Shown: in pieces, positions 32,822-42,802 of the stretch
How positions within the stretch are numbered: position 1 is the first letter of the stretch
Layout of the letters: every line of letters starts with the position of its first letter
IMG/VR virus record: IMGVR_UViG_3300034358_000008
Span: 1 to 64,000 of that record
Direction: 5' to 3' (one strand)
Length of the DNA stretch: 64,000 bases
Position numbers and translations under genes: made by a program
Notes under the pieces: model-generated
What the model saw: the letters and a program-made list of their open reading frames with translations, nothing else
What the model was told of the DNA's origin: nothing
The model's database searches: none

Positions 32822-33265
32822 GTGAAAAAGATCGATAACACAACATTCCTGATTGAAAGACAGGGCGAACTGGAACAGGTCGTCATTGACTATTTCAAGG
32901 GTGAAGCCGACGCCGGACTTATTCGTGGTCACGTCGCCGGAATCCCAAGTTGGTATTCTGTTTATTACTTAGAGGTGCCGACCGAGTATCCATTCGTTGC
33001 ATTACTAAATGATGACGATGAGCGTTGTAACATCGAATTCCAATATGTCAAACCTAGTGACTTCATCTGTATTGATGATGGTTCGCAACGTCTGTTCGAA
33101 TTCCAACTACGTCGGTCAATGACCTCAAGTCCTTATCGCGTGGTCGAGTCAACTTATCAAATACCCGCAAAAGATATCTTCGAGGCTCATCTCAAACTTG
33201 GTCAGACCATGCACCGAAGCGAAGAGTATGAACTGGAGGTCGTTTCCTATCAACAAGTTCGCTAA
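32822..33265 (+). CDS. Hypothetical protein (paralog of 33479-33976)
   Basis: FLIE..GEL...P..YP......D.E.......V..SDF shared between the two. Confidence 0.7.
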   Translation: MKKIDNTTFLIERQGELEQVVIDYFKGEADAGLIRGHVAGIPSWYSVYYLEVPTEYPFVALLNDDDERCNIEFQYVKPSDFICIDDGSQRLFEFQLRRSMTSSPYRVVESTYQIPAKDIFEAHLKLGQTMHRSEEYELEVVSYQQVR

Positions 33266-33478: not shown

Positions 33479-33976
33479 GTGAAAGAATTAGCGCGTAATG
33501 ATGACATAGGTTCATCTGATGCTTATCGCTTTCTTATTGAATCGGAAGGCGAGTTACAAGAAGCGATCGGTAGTGTTATCGTAAAAGATAACCTTAGTCT
33601 TCGGGCAAGTGTCCGGGGCGCAGTAGACGTACCGGGGACGTATCCGTACATTGTTTGCATCTACGGTGATGAAGAATACGATTTCGTTTCACTGGCATTC
33701 GTAACAGTCTCTGATTTCTTTGATGGTCCGAATTACTGCCAACAAATCCGTGATCAGTTGATCAATGCTGAAACCATGAAATGTCAAATGGAACGCATCA
33801 ATGATGCAATCCAAGCCAAAGAGTCTGAAGTTGAGTTCCGTGATCTCGATGATGAGCCTAATCCAGATAATCAGTACTGTCTTAATAACGCACAAGCTGA
33901 ATGGTTTCGTCTGAGTGGCTTTAAAGTTAACTGGGAAAAATATCCACGCACGTGGAAGGTCTCTGGTTGGTTCTAA
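33479..33976 (+). CDS. Hypothetical protein (paralog of 32822-33265)
   Basis: Same motif set. Confidence 0.7.
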   Translation: MKELARNDDIGSSDAYRFLIESEGELQEAIGSVIVKDNLSLRASVRGAVDVPGTYPYIVCIYGDEEYDFVSLAFVTVSDFFDGPNYCQQIRDQLINAETMKCQMERINDAIQAKESEVEFRDLDDEPNPDNQYCLNNAQAEWFRLSGFKVNWEKYPRTWKVSGWF

Positions 33977-34143: not shown

Positions 34144-34629
34144 ATGAGCGGGTTCTGGGGATACGGCAGTGAAGGACATGAAGCGTTTCACGAAAACGCA
34201 TTCAATGAATTATTAGAGACTGTGCATGGGGATGCCAGTCACATCGATCCATTAGTGATGCCTGTTATTACACATGCCTTCGCTTACTACGGTGCAGTGA
34301 GTGTGTGGAGTTGTGAGGGTCATCCAGAGCGTGGTGACAACAAAGGTTACATCACCTGGATCTTTAAGGACGCTGTGAAGCACATGGCCTTTCTGGCGAT
34401 GATGAACCAAGCTCAAACTTGGATGCACAACATCGATCAGAAGGCACACCTGATGTTCGAGTTGGAAGCTAATCCACTGCATCACTCTACAACTGAATAC
34501 GATACCATGGCAATGCCTTCGTTAACACTGCGTACCATGTCGTTCCGTAATAACCGCATTAAAGCACGCTGGTGGGATGAGCTGTTGGAATGCATTACCA
34601 AAATTACTCAAATGACAAAAGGACTTTGA
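34144..34629 (+). CDS. TYW3/Taw3-like fold protein
   Basis: IDPLVMPVI....GAVSVWSCEGH resembles the Taw3 pattern IDE.I.P.L..IN....Y.TTSSCSGR. Confidence 0.45.
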   Translation: MSGFWGYGSEGHEAFHENAFNELLETVHGDASHIDPLVMPVITHAFAYYGAVSVWSCEGHPERGDNKGYITWIFKDAVKHMAFLAMMNQAQTWMHNIDQKAHLMFELEANPLHHSTTEYDTMAMPSLTLRTMSFRNNRIKARWWDELLECITKITQMTKGL

Positions 34630-34630
34630 A

Positions 34631-35140
34631 ATGTCACTACCTACCCTGCCGACCGTAACACTAAACTGCAAGAAAATCGACCACGAAAAACTCTACGATC
34701 ACTTCGAAAAGAAACAAGACGAAGGCCGGTGGGATAAATACAATACGGATATGTTGACATTCGTTAACTATCTGTGGAATCGTCAACTGGGTTCCGTTGT
34801 GGCTATGTCGCACAGCGGTATTGGAGAAGACGTTTCCAATGGCTTCATTCAGTTCATCTGCGACCATCCGGTAATGATGAATGATCTGATCTCAGAGTTG
34901 TCTACTGTACGTGATATTACATCACGCGCATCTCAGCCAACCATCGAGATCCGTTCCAAGTCATTGCCACGGGACATTGATATTCCGGGTATCCACTCGC
35001 ACATCACTGTGATGTTCCGTACACCTCGGTTCCGTTCTCGTAACGAAGCCAGTGCATGGTGGTCAACGCTCGCTGGTAAAGTGACCCAATCCTATGAAAC
35101 TAATATAGGAGACGGTCATGTTGAGAGCCGTGTTGCTTAA
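34631..35140 (+). CDS. Degenerate paralog of 34144-34629
   Basis: GSVVAMSHSG..G(F/Y)I and RT..FR.....A.WW..L shared. Confidence 0.5.
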   Translation: MSLPTLPTVTLNCKKIDHEKLYDHFEKKQDEGRWDKYNTDMLTFVNYLWNRQLGSVVAMSHSGIGEDVSNGFIQFICDHPVMMNDLISELSTVRDITSRASQPTIEIRSKSLPRDIDIPGIHSHITVMFRTPRFRSRNEASAWWSTLAGKVTQSYETNIGDGHVESRVA

Positions 35141-36313: not shown

Positions 36314-37198
36314 CTATTTGAGGAAAGTCCCACAGGAAGCCTGTACATCTGTACCGACACGCGGGATTAGTTTGACACGGCCTTCAGGCAAGCGTCGTTT
36401 GATATAGCGGTAAAGGTAATCGATCTGACCGAATACAGGTTCACGTGACAGGTGTCCCTCTGGTGGATTGTAGCGAACGATATTCCAGTTAACGTCTAGT
36501 TGATAACCATCGATCTCATCTAGAATACACTTGACGTCATGGAGTGTGTCATTCTCGTGTTCAATGAAAGCGTAATGGATCTTTGGAACTTTACCGGTGT
36601 GGAGCTGCCATTCTTTAAGTGCACTAAACGCATTACGTGGGTATTGGGCTTTAGGTAACCAACGCCGACGGAATCGTTCGTTAAGCGAATATACAGAGTA
36701 GTACAACTCAGGGTAAACCGTTGGATCTTGGAATACGTTTACTAGACCCCTGTTACCGAACTCCTCAGGGAAGATAGTCGAGATCAGGAATTTAGCTTCC
36801 AATCCGTATGCAGCTGCACGTTCTTTCAACCCACGCAGAATCAAGTCAGCATTAGCTAAGAAGATCCTGTTGGCCAATGGTTCGCCACGCGCCATGAAAT
36901 TAAAGTGAACACGTTCAGCCGGATGTTTGGTAGCATAGTATGCCAATACTTCGTCCGCCTGCTGGAAATATTCCTCCACAGTGACGTCACGCAGATCAGT
37001 CTGTCCAGTGGCCGTCAACCAGCACATCCTACAAGCTTGCTTACAGCCCGTCTGAGAGCTTAAGTAAACAATGAAGTACTCGTCTGTCCTTCTTACATAA
37101 CGTGCCTCCAATCGTCCCCTGTGATCTTCAAAGACATGTTCGAAGTTAACGGATTGGTCTAATTGCGAATGGTGTTCTTTAAAGATCAGCTGGGTCAT
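36314..37198 (-). CDS. RlmN/Cfr-like radical SAM protein lacking the N-terminal domain
   Basis: SSQTGCKQACRMC (CxxxCxxC), FMARGEPLAN (cf. MGMGEP), ENDT, RYNP and C-terminal ASCG (cf. AACG). Confidence 0.85.
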   Translation of the reverse strand: MTQLIFKEHHSQLDQSVNFEHVFEDHRGRLEARYVRRTDEYFIVYLSSQTGCKQACRMCWLTATGQTDLRDVTVEEYFQQADEVLAYYATKHPAERVHFNFMARGEPLANRIFLANADLILRGLKERAAAYGLEAKFLISTIFPEEFGNRGLVNVFQDPTVYPELYYSVYSLNERFRRRWLPKAQYPRNAFSALKEWQLHTGKVPKIHYAFIEHENDTLHDVKCILDEIDGYQLDVNWNIVRYNPPEGHLSREPVFGQIDYLYRYIKRRLPEGRVKLIPRVGTDVQASCGTFLK

Positions 37199-37208
37199 GG
37201 TAGGTCCT

Positions 37209-37853
37209 TTAGTATTTATAAGGTGCTTGGGTTGAAAGCTCTTCTAGAGTTTGGTAAGTAGCCAACCAATCGGTAGGCCAGCCTTGAGCGAGTTCGTATA
37301 ACCGATCTAACAGAGCTTCCCAATCGTAACTTCGACCAGGGAGATATTCTACGAATAGCTGTGCCATACCGCCTGTCCGTAAAGTTACTTCCTTACTGAT
37401 CTCATCCATTCGTTCCCAATGAGCGTTAAGGTCTTTACTCTTCCAAGCAACGAATACATCGAAGTCATTGTAACTACATTCGTAGAAGTCTTGCGACAGG
37501 TCACCAATCAAACAACCGATGTCATAACGGGCTTTCTCTTTAATAGCCTCGTCAGTACGGAGAGATGGTACTTCTATCTTAATCTTGAATTTACCAATGT
37601 TGTACAACGTGATGATAACATTGACGTGACGTTCGCCTTTGGTGTTAACCCACAGGGAATAAACGACGTCGTGTGCATTGAGCATCTTATCCAGTTCACG
37701 TCGGACTATGTTTCGGAACGGTACTTGGTTAAGGTACTGGTGACGCTTAGCTATTAAAGATAGTTCTTTAGAGAAAGTTGTAACCCATTCATCAACGCTT
37801 GGATTGAAGCGACTCTTAACATGAACATGCGCGATAAAATCATGTAGGTACAT
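37209..37853 (-). CDS. Hypothetical protein
   Basis: 214-aa ORF with GAGG SD, upstream of the radical SAM gene. Confidence 0.7.
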   Translation of the reverse strand: MYLHDFIAHVHVKSRFNPSVDEWVTTFSKELSLIAKRHQYLNQVPFRNIVRRELDKMLNAHDVVYSLWVNTKGERHVNVIITLYNIGKFKIKIEVPSLRTDEAIKEKARYDIGCLIGDLSQDFYECSYNDFDVFVAWKSKDLNAHWERMDEISKEVTLRTGGMAQLFVEYLPGRSYDWEALLDRLYELAQGWPTDWLATYQTLEELSTQAPYKY

Positions 37854-37961: not shown

Positions 37962-38486
37962 ATGTCTAAAAGTAATTCGAAAGTAAACTGTGTGTTCTAT
38001 GGTTTCATCGGTGTGTTGTTAGCATTTGCTGCTGTCTGTCTCGTTATGGCTATTGCTGGCGTTCTAACTCGCCCAGTGTATGCCTCTGAAATGAAAACTG
38101 AACAGTATGAGGTGCTCTATAAGCTTCCCAAAGAGGAAGTCAAGATCACCAAAGAAGTATGTGACACTGTGACTCAATCGGCTGCCTGGATTAAAGGCAT
38201 GATCAATAAAGGTTACGATGATGATGCGATTAGTGAGAAACTGTCTGAAGCAGCTCTGGCTAATCTGGGTGATCGTAACGGTTGGATTGCCTACTACATG
38301 CTGGTTGATCCAAAGGCTTTGGCTAACATGCGTGAATGGCCTACAGAAGCCTCTTACCAGTGGATGCAACAGAAGTACCCTACCATGAATGGTGGTGAGT
38401 ACTATCAGGTATACGCCGGTGGTAAATGCGATCAATTGATCGGTAAGATTGTGAAGGTGCATCAGGTAAAGAAGCTTGATGATTAA
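37962..38486 (+). CDS. Putative exported or membrane-anchored protein
   Basis: N-terminal hydrophobic segment; two Cys in the mature region. Confidence 0.65.
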   Translation: MSKSNSKVNCVFYGFIGVLLAFAAVCLVMAIAGVLTRPVYASEMKTEQYEVLYKLPKEEVKITKEVCDTVTQSAAWIKGMINKGYDDDAISEKLSEAALANLGDRNGWIAYYMLVDPKALANMREWPTEASYQWMQQKYPTMNGGEYYQVYAGGKCDQLIGKIVKVHQVKKLDD

Positions 38487-38538
38487 CGTCATATTGCCCT
38501 CACCTTCGGGTGGGGGCAATATGTTCTATTTTTTTTGC

Positions 38539-38934
38539 TTAGCTCAGCGAGCCAATCAATTTATCCCCTAGGAATAACTGTAACATGTAACCGTTCCAAG
38601 TCCTGACAGATGGTTTCCAGTATGATCGGTGATTAGAACCACCCATTGCGTCACTTGCACTATGTACTCGCCATTTACCCATCAATGTGTCTTCAAGCAT
38701 TACCCGCATTTGTTCACGGGTACGCGTGCAATCTCCCAGAAGGTTTTCACGAGTATATACTTCGGCTTCCATTAGGTACAGGTTAATGAGATCTTGCGGT
38801 GGTTGCATAACCTGGTCAGCTATGGATAGACTCCGAGCCGTTACCTTTTGCACATTCTTCAGTGCGCTCTCAGCAGCTTTACGTTCACCGTGCATACGAG
38901 CAATGTTGTTCTTAAGTGTTTCTAGTTTACGCAT
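38539..38934 (-). CDS. Hypothetical coiled-coil protein (true start probably 38934)
   Basis: GAGGA SD before MRKLETLK; the longer listed ORF runs through a terminator. Confidence 0.65.
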   Translation of the reverse strand: MRKLETLKNNIARMHGERKAAESALKNVQKVTARSLSIADQVMQPPQDLINLYLMEAEVYTRENLLGDCTRTREQMRVMLEDTLMGKWRVHSASDAMGGSNHRSYWKPSVRTWNGYMLQLFLGDKLIGSLS

Positions 38935-38960
38935 TGTATTTTCCTCTAAGACGGAATAGA

Positions 38961-39246
38961 ACCCTACCCGAAGGTAGGGTCTAAGGACGAGTTTACTGTT
39001 TCGCTTCAGCCCATGATACCTTGGGGAAGGGTGCTCTAATATCATCGAGTAGATGGACCTAGTGCCTGAGTCGTCAGGTGTTCAGTCTATTCGGGGTACG
39101 GGCCTTCGACTTTCCTGATACTCTCTTATTCCGACTTGTCAGAGAGCGTCACGGGACATTATTTAATCTCAACTACCTACAGTCTGTGGCCCTAGTCTGA
39201 GGGGATTGGGGGCAAGTAGTTGGAAGAGCAGGACTGTTAGTCTTAC
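38961..39246 (-). ncRNA. Candidate structured ncRNA (about 270-285 nt including the terminator)
   Basis: Starts at the ATAGTATGTA motif, has several stems, and ends at a cUUCGg terminator (38961-38980). Confidence 0.65.
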
Positions 39247-41554: not shown

Positions 41555-41630
41555 TGGCACGCACCCCAAGAGTCGAACTCGGAACCAACTGCTTTGGAGG
41601 CAGCTGCTCTGCCAGTTGAGCTAGGCACGT
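41555..41630 (-). tRNA. trnW: tRNA-Trp (CCA)
   Basis: 76-nt cloverleaf; anticodon loop CTCCAAA; T-loop TTCGACT; encoded CCA. Confidence 0.93.
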
Positions 41631-41641
41631 ATTAATTCTTT

Positions 41642-41651
41642 TACATACTAT
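41642..41651 (-). promoter_or_regulatory. ATAGTATGTA late-type (TATG) promoter motif
   Basis: Lies 11 nt upstream of tRNA-Trp; same 10-mer at 39244, 42878 and 51187. Confidence 0.65.
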
Positions 41652-41959
41652 TACTTAGCGAGTAAACTTTTCACGTAAGCTTCCCATTCAAACACTGTAA
41701 AGATAGTCCTGAGTAGGTCACACGTTGATACACCATTTACATAGTTGATATGTAAAGTCTTTAACGAGTGAGCTGGTGTGATGTATGTTAAATTGGAATC
41801 GTATATATCATGCTTCACCAACAACCCATTGCATACATTACCTCCTTCGCTACAGAGGTATGTGATATGATGCCGTCTCTCAACGCCGGTCTCTTCGCAA
41901 TCTGCAACTGCATGATTTGATATTGTAATCATGTCTCTTTTACAACATGGACACTTCAT
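41651..41959 (-). CDS. Small Cys-rich putative zinc-binding protein
   Basis: MKCPCCK...C...C....C pattern. Confidence 0.6.
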   Translation of the reverse strand: MKCPCCKRDMITISNHAVADCEETGVERRHHITYLCSEGGNVCNGLLVKHDIYDSNLTYITPAHSLKTLHINYVNGVSTCDLLRTIFTVFEWEAYVKSLLAK

Positions 41960-41971
41960 AGTAGGTAACCT

Positions 41972-42142
41972 TTAGATAGTACATCTGCGGTTAAGCATTT
42001 CTTCCGTAGGACGTTGCTGCTTAGCCATCAGTGACAGTTGACGAGTCATCAATACCGTACGCATACGGGAACGCCTTAGCCGTGTGGCTTCATCAGGACC
42101 CATAGCCAACCTAGCTTTTTCATACAGTGCTTCTACTGACAT
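41972..42142 (-). CDS. 56-aa basic protein, paralog of 40725-40895
   Basis: Same length; shared L.EK, P, RL and T.E.L..RCT motif. Confidence 0.65.
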   Translation of the reverse strand: MSVEALYEKARLAMGPDEATRLRRSRMRTVLMTRQLSLMAKQQRPTEEMLNRRCTI

Positions 42143-42199
42143 TTGAATAACCTTTAGGGAAAGACGGAATAAGAGAACCCCGAAGGGCTCTCTTAGAAT

Positions 42200-42275
42200 T
42201 GGCTCCATGACCTGGACTCGAACCAGGGACCACACCGTTAACAGCGGTGGGCTCTACCAACTGAGCTATCATGGA
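42200..42275 (-). tRNA. trnN: tRNA-Asn (GTT)
   Basis: 76-nt cloverleaf TCCATGA...TCATGGA-G-CCA; anticodon loop CTGTTAA. Confidence 0.95.
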
Positions 42276-42359
42276 ATGTAACTGGGTGATTCTCCTAACG
42301 CCGTAACGTTAAGTTAAGACAGCATTTACTCAGGCGCAGCCGCTGCAAGAATCATGTAA

Positions 42360-42524
42360 CTATGCTTGCTGTTCACGTTTGTCAAGTATGTACTCGGCAT
42401 CGTTCACAGCTTCTTTTAGAACTTGTTTATCTAGCTTCAGATTTTTCCAGCTAAGTCGAGAGCAACACTGACAGTCAGCTGGTCCGAAGTTATCCAATGG
42501 ACGTGGTTTGATTTTTACTTTCAT
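42360..42524 (-). CDS. 54-aa protein with a CxCC motif, inside the tRNA operon
   Basis: GAGGTG SD before MKVKIK. Confidence 0.6.
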   Translation of the reverse strand: MKVKIKPRPLDNFGPADCQCCSRLSWKNLKLDKQVLKEAVNDAEYILDKREQQA

Positions 42525-42717
42525 CAGACACCTCTTTGAATAGGTAGAATGTAATGTCACTTTAACCAGCGTAAGCTAATAGCCCTGTTAGATAGGCGGG
42601 CCGTCCGAATCAAGGGAGTTGAACCCAAGTTCTACATTACATTCATACAACTGGCGACGGGCACTGTTTAGACTCAGTGCACGGTCAAGCACGCTTGGGA
42701 GGCGACCGTCATTAAAA

Positions 42718-42802
42718 TGGTGGAGAGACAAGGATTCGAACCTTGGAAGAATTAACGCCGGATTTACAGTCCGGTCCCTTTGAGCCGCTCGGGAATCTCT
42801 CC
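42718..42802 (-). tRNA. trnY: tRNA-Tyr (GTA)
   Basis: 85-nt class II cloverleaf; anticodon loop CTGTAAA; GGTTCGAATCC; encoded CCA. Confidence 0.95.

What the first reader, a model, noticed from the sequence alone, without database searches (positions are those of the whole stretch)
36314..37198. RlmN-like radical SAM enzyme missing the resolving cysteine and the N-terminal domain
It aligns with E. coli RlmN: RLEARY/RVETVY, SSQ.GCxxxCxxC, MARGEP/MGMGEP and ASCG/AACG, so the Cys355 equivalent is kept. The Cys118 position (LCVSSQ) reads VYLSSQ, i.e. Tyr. In RlmN/Cfr, Cys118 resolves the covalent protein-RNA adduct, and its loss traps the crosslink. This enzyme may therefore use different chemistry or substrate, or crosslink to and inactivate tRNA/rRNA. 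About 85 N-terminal residues are also absent.
Basis: partly seen in the sequence, partly recalled or inferred. Interest (0 to 1): 0.72.

Follow-up and report, generated by a model that had tools for sequence, protein, structure and literature searches.

The report
Phage RlmN-like enzyme with tyrosine swap
A jumbo phage carries a shortened relative of the RNA-methylating radical-SAM enzymes RlmN/Cfr in which one of the two catalytic cysteines is always a tyrosine; this is the hallmark of a large, mostly phage-borne, apparently undescribed enzyme family, and what it modifies is unknown.

Summary
Window 36314-37198 (-) encodes an intact 294-aa radical-SAM protein. Its fold and profile alignments are closest to RlmN and Cfr. 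Tyr45 lies exactly under RlmN Cys118 / Cfr Cys105. Cys289 lies under the methyl-carrier Cys355/Cys338. The roughly 75-85-residue N-terminal HhH2 RNA-binding domain is absent.

This is not a degenerate copy. It belongs to a sharply separated family: 280-690 bits against its own profile, versus 27-45 bits for true RlmNs. The family has at least 150, probably about 400, clusters at 50% identity. Tyr is present in 232 of 233 diverse members, and the only invariant cysteines are the three cluster ligands and Cys289. The family is mostly viral, especially jumbo phages. One bacterial subclade is tied to an AbiEii-type nucleotidyltransferase, an LRR protein and a P-loop protein. Bacteria that carry it also keep a normal RlmN.

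Gene neighbours are nucleic-acid related but mixed: tRNA arrays, RtcB and a CCA-adding enzyme in some lineages, and SbcCD, DNA ligase or RecA in others.

My best reading is a working class-A methyl-synthase-type enzyme. Tyr45 would replace the proton-abstracting cysteine, and the target would be differently recognised, probably RNA. A deliberate covalent cross-linker is not excluded but is unlikely. I found no literature on the family. I rate it a new variant of a known kind.

The parts
36314..37198 (-). CDS (stop included) of the 294-aa RlmN/Cfr-like radical-SAM protein (P0001). It is the only radical-SAM gene in the 324,912-bp phage record.
37064..37066 (-). Codon TAC for Tyr45, at the position of RlmN Cys118 / Cfr Cys105 (the proton-abstracting Cys). 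It is one A-to-G transition away from a Cys codon.
37022..37045 (-). CX3CX2C motif (Cys52, Cys56, Cys59), the ligands of the radical-SAM [4Fe-4S] cluster. Invariant in the family.
36332..36334 (-). Codon for Cys289 in the invariant 'ASCG(T/M)F' C-terminal loop. It is the equivalent of the methyl-carrier Cys355 (RlmN) / Cys338 (Cfr). The loop has low pLDDT, as expected for a mobile loop.
36878..36886 (-). G105-E106-P107 of 'FMARGEP', which aligns with the RlmN/Cfr 'MGMGEP/A' SAM-binding motif. Family-invariant Arg104 replaces a Gly/Met.
37061..37198 (-). Residues 1-46: four beta strands that correspond to the beta-prime sheet extension plus beta1 of RlmN/Cfr. The protein starts here, with no HhH2 domain ahead of it.
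37205..37210 (-). Shine-Dalgarno-like 'aaagga' overlapping the stop (TAA, 37211-37209) of the upstream gene, which implies co-transcription and coupled translation.
37209..37853 (-). Upstream 214-aa gene of unknown function in the same operon. It has no Pfam or PHROG hit and is not conserved next to the enzyme in related phages.
41555..42802 (-). Context: the phage's only three tRNA genes (Trp-CCA, Asn-GTT, Tyr-GTA). They are on the same strand, 4.4-5.6 kb upstream. All have A37, A38 and an encoded CCA end.

Best explanation
The gene encodes a functional member of a large, mostly phage-borne sister family of the class-A radical-SAM methylases RlmN and Cfr.

**Shown**
- It keeps the [4Fe-4S]/SAM core, the beta-prime extension and the C-terminal loop cysteine (Cys289) that carries the methyl group in RlmN/Cfr.
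- It has an essentially invariant tyrosine (Tyr45) where RlmN/Cfr have the second cysteine, which abstracts the C2/C8 proton to break the enzyme-RNA cross-link.
- It lacks the HhH2 RNA-binding domain.

**Inferred mechanism**
1. One SAM methylates Cys289.
2. A second SAM is cleaved to the 5'-deoxyadenosyl radical, which abstracts H from the S-methyl group.
3. The methylene radical adds to an sp2 carbon of a nucleobase, giving a covalent adduct.
4. Tyr45 performs the resolving step, either as tyrosinate base or by proton-coupled electron/H-atom transfer. The enzyme therefore turns over and leaves a C-methylated base.

**Inferred target**
The target is probably a conserved RNA, with tRNA first and rRNA second. 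It would be recognised differently from A37/A2503, because the adenine-contacting positions are replaced by other, family-invariant residues. In this phage lineage the enzyme would belong to the tRNA / RNA-repair (RtcB) gene set that maintains translation during infection.
For: **Homology and fold**
- Sequence and fold matches to RlmN/Cfr.
- Exact alignment of Tyr45 with Cys118/Cys105 and of Cys289 with Cys355/Cys338.

**Family-wide selection**
- Tyr is present in 232 of 233 members and in 71 of 71 full-length viral copies.
- The only invariant Cys residues are C52, C56, C59 and C289.
- At least 150 clusters at 50% identity score 280 bits or more, and 423 clusters reach E<=1e-30.
- The family is monophyletic with support 100 (FastTree local SH-like) when rooted on RlmN.
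- There is a score gap of 280-690 bits versus 27-45 bits.
- The single Cys-bearing member (P0264) is nested among Tyr members, so Tyr and Cys are interchangeable by one transition. That is at least compatible with equivalent roles.

**Mechanistic background**
- The second Cys acts as a proton abstractor (PMC13001441). A tyrosine can in principle do this (inference).

**Not a replacement for RlmN**
- 5 of 5 bacterial genomes with a family member also have a canonical RlmN above cut-off.
- Cfr residues within 5 A of A2503 map to family-invariant but different residues: V35, R37, Y41, Y45, N100.

**RNA-leaning context**
- The window's only 3 tRNAs lie 4.4 kb upstream on the same strand.
- In Psa21, D6 and RVTF4 the gene sits 60-1200 nt after the tRNA array and 1-2 kb before RtcB.
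- tRNAs lie within 10 kb in 10 of 28 viral lineages. In L139 the gene is inside a 23-tRNA array.
- A CCA-adding enzyme lies 1.7 kb downstream in CcrColossus.
- AbiEii-family or GrpB neighbours, which belong to the nucleotidyltransferase fold, occur in bacteria.
Against: - No biochemical data exist for any member, so neither substrate nor product is known.
- No coordinates of the model were available. I could not measure whether the Tyr45 hydroxyl reaches the Cys289/SAM site.
- Gene context is mixed. In three other viral lineages of about 9 loci each, the gene directly follows SbcD/SbcC-like, NAD-dependent DNA ligase or RecA-like genes. That fits DNA as well as RNA.
- 52 of 76 viral loci have no tRNA within 10 km... 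within 10 kb, and no control for chance tRNA proximity was run.
- In this phage RtcB is about 43 kb away.
- A tyrosine is a poorer base than a thiolate, and no Tyr variant of RlmN/Cfr has been reported in the papers I could search.
Confidence: 0.5

Rival explanations
1. **Different substrate class or different chemistry.** The enzyme acts on DNA or on a nucleotide. Examples are C-methylation of a DNA base at a few sites, or a repair-type reaction in which Cys289 and Tyr45 form a hydrogen-atom relay as Cys and Tyr do in spore photoproduct lyase. It would not be an RNA methylase.
For: - In three independent viral lineages the gene is the immediate downstream neighbour of SbcD/SbcC-like, NAD-dependent DNA ligase or RecA-like genes.
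- The distant phage homologue in Tunturi_5 sits beside SbcD-like and DnaB-like genes.
- The HhH2 domain that recognises RNA tertiary structure is missing.
- Adenine-contacting positions differ from Cfr.
- A Cys/Tyr pair is a known radical relay in another radical-SAM DNA-repair enzyme (my own knowledge, not tested here).
Against: - The fold and sequence are much closer to RlmN/Cfr (TM 0.72-0.79, E 1e-14) than to spore photoproduct lyase (TM about 0.5, E about 7e-6).
- The methyl-carrier loop 'ASCG' and the Glu31 equivalent of the conserved RlmN Glu are retained.
- No conserved companion genes (dNTP-exclusion enzymes, kinases) of the kind seen with nucleotide-level DNA hypermodification were found.
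- Slow, oxygen-sensitive radical-SAM chemistry suits a few RNA sites better than genome-wide DNA modification (inference).
- DNA-metabolism, tRNA and RNA-repair genes commonly share the same early/middle regions of large phages, so adjacency is weak evidence.
Confidence: 0.2
2. **Deliberate covalent cross-linker.** Without the resolving cysteine, the enzyme stays covalently attached to its RNA target after one turnover. It would act as a suicide inactivator of a tRNA or rRNA. In phages this would hit a host RNA. In the bacterial AbiEii-linked clade it would serve as an abortive-infection effector.
For: - RlmN C118A/S and Cfr C105A/S trap the cross-link (PMC13001441; PDB 5hr6/5hr7 titles).
- The family has no second conserved Cys.
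- One bacterial clade is tightly paired with an AbiEii-family toxin-type nucleotidyltransferase. In L003 it lies beside a retron-type reverse transcriptase, which suggests a defence-island setting.
Against: - The replacement is not a neutral small residue. It is an invariant, chemically competent Tyr.
- A one-shot protein reagent is an inefficient way to deplete abundant RNAs.
- Most family members stand alone in phage genomes among housekeeping-type nucleic-acid genes, with no immunity partner.
- No PADLOC defence model matches the protein or its partners other than AbiEii.
Confidence: 0.08
3. **Ordinary RlmN/Cfr orthologue.** It makes m2A or m8A at the usual sites, and another cysteine takes over structurally for Cys118. 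The Tyr would be incidental.
For: - Databases name some members 'RlmN' or 'Cfr family'.
- 40 of 233 members have a Cys at the neighbouring position -1.
Against: - Scores lie far below the curated cut-offs (54 versus 290 bits for RlmN; 39-44 versus 468-550 for the Cfr models).
- The family is a separate clade.
- No additional Cys is conserved. The -1 Cys is absent from this protein (Val44) and from 83% of members, and on a beta strand it would point away from the site.
- The N-terminal RNA-binding domain is missing.
- Host genomes keep their own RlmN.
Confidence: 0.05
4. **Catalytically dead relic or pseudo-enzyme.** It would be retained for binding only.
For: - Loss of a catalytic Cys and of a domain.
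- Only a weak Pfam Radical_SAM score (18 bits).
Against: - Cluster ligands, SAM-binding motifs, the carrier Cys and about 70 other positions are invariant across phages and bacteria.
- The model is confident.
- The ORF is intact, with a ribosome-binding site.
Confidence: 0.03

Closest known systems
RlmN (dual-specificity 23S rRNA A2503 / tRNA A37 C2-methylase; TIGR00048; PDB 3RFA, 5HR7)
   Same: - Radical-SAM partial TIM barrel with beta-prime extension.
- CX3CX2C immediately after an 'SSQxGC' strand.
- GEP SAM-binding motif.
- C-terminal mobile loop with the methyl-carrier Cys in an 'A(A/S)CG' motif.
- Conserved Glu (Glu31 / Glu105).
- Best PDB fold match, TM 0.72-0.73.
   Different: - Tyr instead of Cys118.
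- No HhH2 N-terminal domain.
- About 19% identity and 54 bits versus the 290-bit cut-off.
- Different invariant residues at substrate-facing positions.
- Coexists with a true RlmN in bacteria.
Cfr (23S rRNA A2503 C8-methylase; PDB 9P0P and the cryo-EM cross-linked complex, PMC13001441)
   Same: - Same class-A architecture and two-SAM ping-pong scaffold.
- It is the best sequence hit for the family profile in the PDB (6e-17).
- Mobile-element borne.
   Different: - Cys105 is replaced by Tyr.
- The N-terminal domain is absent.
- Cfr model scores are 39-44 bits versus cut-offs of 468-550.
- Residues within 5 A of A2503 are not conserved.
- There is no evidence that it modifies A2503 or affects antibiotic susceptibility.
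PHROG 27142 ('Fe-S-cluster redox domain-containing'): 201phi2-1 gp434, Psa21 gp398, CcrColossus gp283
   Same: Full-length match, E 2e-145. Identity is 65-71% to the Pseudomonas jumbo-phage proteins and 44% to the Caulobacter phage proteins.
   Different: Nothing differs; this is the protein's own family. The family carries only automatic names and no described function.
Other short phage RlmN-like proteins (Tunturiibacter phage Tunturi_5 gp170; Klebsiella phage 05F01 gene_104)
   Same: They also lack the N-terminal domain and keep the 'SCG/ACG' C-terminal Cys. Identity is about 25%.
   Different: Tunturi_5 keeps a Cys at the Cys118 position. 05F01 has Val there, with a Cys three residues later, and sits next to anaerobic ribonucleotide reductase genes. 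So the Tyr is specific to the family studied here.
Bacterial Pnkp/Hen1 RNA repair (functional analogy only, from my own knowledge)
   Same: A methylase encoded beside RNA end-healing and end-sealing enzymes. Here these are RtcB, a CCA-adding enzyme, nucleotidyltransferase-fold proteins and P-loop kinase-like proteins.
   Different: There is no homology. Hen1 is a conventional 2'-O-methyltransferase. The analogy is a hypothesis about biological role, not a test.

Membership tests
Radical-SAM superfamily | CX3CX2C cluster-binding motif in a partial TIM-barrel fold with SAM-binding motifs | tested here: met
   C52/C56/C59 are invariant and the GEP motif is present. Fold matches to many radical-SAM structures. 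The Pfam PF04055 score is only 18.4 bits, below the 29.5 cut-off, so membership rests on fold and motifs.
Class-A radical-SAM methylases (RlmN/Cfr) | C-terminal loop cysteine that is S-methylated and carries the methyl group (Cys355 / Cys338) | tested here: met
   Cys289 aligns with it in both single-sequence and profile alignments and is invariant in 'ASCG'. Methylation itself is not testable here.
Class-A radical-SAM methylases (RlmN/Cfr) | Second conserved cysteine (Cys118 / Cys105) that abstracts the C2/C8 proton and resolves the cross-link | tested here: not met
   Tyr45 occupies the position. Tyr is found in 232 of 233 family members, and no other conserved Cys exists.
Class-A radical-SAM methylases (RlmN/Cfr) | N-terminal HhH2 RNA-binding domain (Pfam RlmN_N) | tested here: not met
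   The alignment starts at RlmN residue 86. Family members are about 290-300 aa, and the upstream ORF has no Pfam hit.
RlmN equivalog (TIGR00048) / Cfr equivalogs (TIGR04432, NF000424, NF011024) | Score above the curated cut-off | tested here: not met
   54.1 versus 290 bits for TIGR00048, and 39-44 versus 468-550 bits for the Cfr models. True RlmNs from the same bacterial genomes score 315-479 bits.
RlmN/Cfr | Closest structural neighbours are RlmN/Cfr | tested here: met
   Foldseek against PDB gives RlmN, 6fz6 and Cfr at E 1e-14 to 1e-10 and TM 0.62-0.79, with the next families at 5e-7. AFDB clusters and ESM Atlas agree.
RlmN/Cfr | Produces m2A or m8A at A2503 of 23S rRNA and/or A37 of tRNA | not testable with these tools
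   No biochemical or mass-spectrometry data exist. Needs reconstitution.
PHROG 27142 | Full-length profile match | tested here: met
   E 2e-145, residues 1-294 on profile positions 1-300.
Known anti-phage defence proteins (PADLOC 2.0) | Match to any defence-system model | tested here: not met
   No hit for P0001 or for the bacterial homologue P0080. Only the neighbouring AbiEii and retron RT genes match.

The most novel reading that the evidence does not exclude
The family consists of programmed radical-SAM cross-linkers. With tyrosine in place of the resolving cysteine, the methylene bridge from Cys289 to a nucleobase is not broken, so each protein molecule becomes permanently attached to, and inactivates, one molecule of a specific RNA or DNA. 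Phages would use this to disable a host RNA. Myxococcota and Planctomycetota would use it, together with an AbiEii-type nucleotidyltransferase, as an infection-triggered effector.
Probability: 0.08. Interest if true: 0.9.

Novelty: new variant of a known kind. Interest (0 to 1): 0.62.

Why it matters
**Enzymology.** Class-A radical-SAM methylation is defined by two cysteines, a methyl carrier and a proton abstractor. A large natural family keeps the first and has replaced the second with an invariant tyrosine. This is a ready-made test of how essential the thiol is, and of whether tyrosine can resolve the protein-nucleic acid radical adduct. It may also lead to a different product or substrate.

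**Phage biology.** The family is mostly viral and recurs in jumbo phages of unrelated hosts. It often lies beside tRNA arrays, RtcB and a CCA-adding enzyme. It could therefore be an unrecognised phage function for modifying, protecting or repairing translation RNAs.

**Annotation.** Current names such as 'RlmN', 'Cfr family' or 'Fe-S-cluster redox domain' are misleading.

**A direct route to the substrate.** If Tyr45 is the resolving residue, a Tyr45 variant should trap the target covalently, as C118A does for RlmN.

**Bacterial module.** The bacterial subclade defines a conserved four-gene module with an AbiEii-family enzyme. This module has not been described.

Tried and rejected
- **Near-identity DNA search of phage records.** A 2.1-kb query found nothing. 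Relatives appeared only at protein level.
- **Literature.** Eight full-text searches and a term search inside the 2021 jumbo-phage comparative review found no paper describing this family or a Tyr-for-Cys118 class-A enzyme. The library lacks most subscription journals, so this is not proof of absence.
- **PADLOC.** No defence model matches the protein, its bacterial homologue, or the LRR and P-loop partners.
- **Window neighbours.** No informative Pfam or PHROG hits, and the immediate neighbours are not conserved in related phages.
- **AbiEii in the phage.** No AbiEii-like gene in the phage genome.
- **Complex prediction.** I tested the bacterial homologue P0080 against its AbiEii-type neighbour. 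Result: no verdict (0.29, below the 0.34 mark). This is not evidence either way.
- **Conserved neighbours outside the Myxococcota/Planctomycetota clade.** None is shared widely.
- **A substitute cysteine.** No invariant Cys other than the four. Cys224 of this protein is not conserved. A Cys at position -1 occurs in only 17% of members and not in this protein.
- **Model geometry.** I could not measure distances around Tyr45 because model coordinates are not exposed.
- **Chance control for tRNA proximity.** I did not compute a control from whole viral contigs, so that association is only suggestive.
Full report
**The gene and the observation**

Window 36314-37198 on the minus strand is an intact ORF of 294 codons. 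It has a ribosome-binding-like 'aaagga', and its ATG lies 10 nt after the stop of an upstream 214-aa gene of unknown function.

Several searches tie it to RlmN and Cfr:
- The curated RlmN model matches at E 1.2e-14. The score is only 54 bits against a cut-off of 290, and the alignment covers model positions 79-341 of 355. Cfr models match at about 1e-10.
- Pfam's general Radical_SAM model scores below threshold.
- Against PDB sequences, the single protein finds Cfr (2e-9). A profile of the family finds Cfr (6e-17), an RlmN-like protein from Sphaerobacter (6fz6) and E. coli RlmN (1e-7).

In these alignments 'IVYLSSQTGC' lies under RlmN 'TLCVSSQVGC' and Cfr 'SFCISSQCGC'. Tyr45 therefore occupies the position of Cys118/Cys105. 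'DVQASCG' lies under 'DIDAACG', so Cys289 is the Cys355/Cys338 equivalent. Query residue 12 pairs with RlmN residue 86, so the HhH2 N-terminal domain is missing.

An AlphaFold2 model built on 24 family sequences is confident (pLDDT 89.8), apart from the C-terminal loop, which is also mobile in RlmN. Its best structural matches are RlmN (TM 0.72-0.73), 6fz6 (0.79) and Cfr. Other radical-SAM families are far behind. AFDB and ESM Atlas agree.

**It is a family trait, not an accident of this copy**

The 90%-identity protein search returned 2416 hits. All 118 full-length sequences among the top 120 read 'YLSSQ' and 'ASCG(T/M)F'.

A profile search of 1.84 billion 50%-identity representatives found 423 clusters at E<=1e-30. 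The best 150 all score 280 bits or more.

Over 233 diverse members the position is Tyr 232 times and Cys once. That single exception, P0264, is nested deep among Tyr-bearing sequences on a long branch. It is therefore a secondary TAY-to-TGY change.

In a 24-sequence alignment spanning phages and bacteria, about 70 positions are invariant. The only invariant cysteines are the three cluster ligands and Cys289. Cys224 of this protein is not conserved. A Cys at position -1 occurs in 17% of members but not here. So no other conserved cysteine can stand in for Cys118.

With the family HMM, members score 280-690 bits and genuine RlmNs 27-45 bits. A 242-sequence FastTree rooted on RlmN and RlmN-like proteins recovers the family as one clade with support 100, a local SH-like value. 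All canonical and intermediate RlmN-like proteins taken from the same bacterial genomes keep the Cys.

**Who has it**

The window is the first 64 kb of a 324,912-bp viral record. The nearest named relatives of the protein are:
- Pseudomonas jumbo phages Psa21 (71%), D6, 201phi2-1 gp434 (67%), Phabio and RVTF4.
- Caulobacter phages CcrColossus and CcrPW (44%).
- Brevundimonas jumbo phages (about 40%).

An IMG/VR scan gave 76 loci, many on 200-460-kb contigs. ESM Atlas clusters of the family are 75-89% viral.

A scan of one genome per prokaryotic species gave 74 loci. They include Planctomycetota, Myxococcota, about 1-Mb Pseudomonas megaplasmids, a few isolates (Nocardia, Wenjunlia, Achromobacter, Acetobacter, rhizobia) and several MAG contigs that look viral.

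Five of five bacterial genomes tested also encode a canonical RlmN above cut-off. The family is therefore an extra paralogue, not a replacement.

In the tree, the window's protein sits in a Pseudomonas-phage clade (support 99). That clade joins the megaplasmid copies, and together they are sister to the Myxococcota/Planctomycetota clade (support 98).

**Context**

In this phage the gene is the only radical-SAM gene. It lies 4.4 kb downstream, on the same strand, of the genome's only three tRNA genes (Trp, Asn, Tyr). All three have A37 and an encoded CCA end.

*RNA-related neighbours in other phages:*
- In Psa21, D6 and RVTF4 the gene follows the tRNA array by 60-1200 nt. It precedes RtcB by 1-2 kb.
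- In this phage RtcB is elsewhere, at 317.6 kb.
- tRNA genes lie within 10 kb in 24 of 76 viral loci, which is 10 of 28 lineages at 60% identity. They are always on the same strand. In L139 the gene is embedded in a 23-tRNA array.
- CcrColossus has a CCA-adding enzyme 1.7 kb downstream.

*DNA-related neighbours in other phages:*
- Three other lineages of about 9 loci each place the gene directly after SbcD/SbcC-like genes, an NAD-dependent DNA ligase, or a RecA-like gene.

*Bacterial neighbours:*
- 39 of 74 loci, all in the Myxococcota/Planctomycetota clade, have an AbiEii-family nucleotidyltransferase gene immediately upstream. It is divergent, with roughly 20-40 bp between the starts. It is followed by an LRR protein of about 500 aa (37 loci) and a 270-297-aa P-loop protein with weak sulfotransferase similarity (22 loci).
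- Two actinomycetes have HTH regulator - enzyme - small ORF - GrpB. In one of them GrpB is fused to a CoaE-like kinase.

The common denominator is nucleic-acid end-processing and nucleotidyl-transfer enzymes. The balance leans to RNA/tRNA but does not exclude DNA. I ran no chance control for tRNA proximity.

**How it most likely works**

According to the recent Cfr cryo-EM study (PMC13001441), class-A enzymes work in these steps:
1. They methylate the C-terminal Cys by SN2 transfer.
2. They generate a methylene radical on that methyl group with a second SAM.
3. The radical adds to C2 or C8 of the adenine, giving a cross-linked radical.
4. The second Cys abstracts the C2/C8 proton, which triggers C-S fragmentation.

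In the same study, the HhH2 domain grips the RNA backbone and tertiary structure.

Everything needed for the first three steps is conserved here. This includes the cluster ligands, SAM motifs, the beta-prime strands and the carrier Cys. The residue for the fourth step is a Tyr under very strong selection. The simplest reading is that Tyr45 does that job, either as tyrosinate base or by proton-coupled electron/H-atom transfer. On that reading the enzyme turns over. This is inference, and no variant data exist.

Cfr residues within 5 A of A2503 map onto positions that are invariant within the family but different from Cfr:
- M95 to V35
- Y97 to R37
- W101 to Y41
- C105 to Y45
- S153 to N100

. 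Together with the missing HhH2 domain, this points to one conserved target that is bound differently from A37/A2503. Because the family spans phages of very different hosts, that target should be universal. The order of likelihood is tRNA, then rRNA, then DNA.

My estimates are:
- About 0.95 that this is a distinct RlmN/Cfr-like family with a functional Tyr.
- About 0.65 that it uses methyl-Cys chemistry catalytically.
- About 0.55 that the substrate is RNA.
- About 0.5 for the combined statement.

**Rivals**
- A different substrate or chemistry, including a DNA or nucleotide target or a Cys/Tyr hydrogen-atom relay (0.2). It is favoured by the SbcCD, ligase and RecA neighbours. It is disfavoured by the much closer fold to RlmN than to spore photoproduct lyase and by the retained carrier loop.
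It is compatible with the mutant precedent and with the AbiEii/retron neighbourhood in L003. It is hard to square with an invariant, reactive Tyr and with stand-alone genes in phage housekeeping regions.
- An ordinary RlmN/Cfr with a substitute Cys (0.05). The data contradict it.
- A dead relic (0.03). The data also contradict it.

**Comparison with the known, and novelty**

The protein works like, and folds like, a class-A radical-SAM methylase. It still fails three membership criteria of RlmN/Cfr: the second Cys, the N-terminal domain and the curated score. It should be filed as a separate sister family, equal to PHROG 27142, and not as RlmN or Cfr.

Other short phage RlmN-like proteins exist with Cys (Tunturi_5 gp170) or Val (Klebsiella 05F01) at the site. 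The Tyr is therefore specific to this family.

Eight literature searches and a term search in the jumbo-phage comparative review found no description of it. I rate it a new variant of a known kind, with interest 0.62. It offers a concrete and testable mechanistic question for radical-SAM enzymology, and a widespread unstudied phage function. There is as yet no evidence of what it modifies.

Noticed in passing
L003:4877-8891 (same place as L006); also L011, L012 and 36 further loci: A conserved bacterial module in Myxococcota and Planctomycetota. The Tyr-type radical-SAM gene is divergently adjacent (roughly 20-40 bp between starts) to an AbiEii-family nucleotidyltransferase gene. That gene is followed by an LRR protein of about 500 aa and a 270-297-aa P-loop protein with weak sulfotransferase similarity. 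None of the partners except AbiEii matches PADLOC. In L003 a retron-type reverse transcriptase and a Band_7 protein lie on the other side.
   Followed up: partly
L054:6748-10125 and L070:9345-10439: In two actinomycetes (Nocardia, Wenjunlia) the homologue sits in an apparent operon: HTH regulator, enzyme, small ORF, GrpB. GrpB is fused to a CoaE-like kinase in Wenjunlia. This is a second, independent pairing with a nucleotidyltransferase-fold protein and a P-loop kinase.
   Followed up: partly
window 41555-42802 (-): The phage's only three tRNA genes (Trp-CCA, Asn-GTT, Tyr-GTA) are clustered here. Close relatives carry 8-18 tRNAs at the equivalent place, so this phage has a reduced array.
   Followed up: partly
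G000:C1:317628-318782 (+) (locus L094), outside the window: An RtcB RNA ligase gene (406 bits) lies about 43 kb from the radical-SAM gene if the genome is circularly permuted. In Psa21, D6 and RVTF4 RtcB is only 1-2 kb downstream of the homologue, so the synteny is broken in this phage.
   Followed up: partly
L095:3863-4789 (Klebsiella phage 05F01) and L096:3977-4972 (Tunturiibacter phage Tunturi_5): Two more short, N-terminal-domain-less RlmN-like phage proteins outside the Tyr family. One has Val at the Cys118 position, with a Cys three residues later, and lies next to anaerobic ribonucleotide reductase genes. The other keeps the Cys and lies next to SbcD-like and DnaB-like genes.
   Followed up: partly
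window 38490-38523: A strong 15-bp GC-rich hairpin followed by a T-run lies between the convergent genes 37962-38486 (+) and 38539-39045 (-). It is probably a bidirectional terminator that ends the + strand gene and insulates the minus-strand operon.
   Followed up: no
window 32822-33265 and 33479-33976 (+): Two neighbouring small proteins of unknown function are weak paralogues (29% identity over 77 residues, pairwise E 4e-6). The next pair (34144-34629, 34631-35140) shares only a marginal C-terminal similarity.
   Followed up: partly
L139:10001-10831 and L055:19-873: On one viral contig the homologue is embedded in a 23-tRNA array, 4 nt from the next tRNA. On a 3-kb contig binned as an archaeal MAG, a tRNA-Val starts 3 nt after its stop. 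These are the tightest tRNA linkages seen.
   Followed up: no
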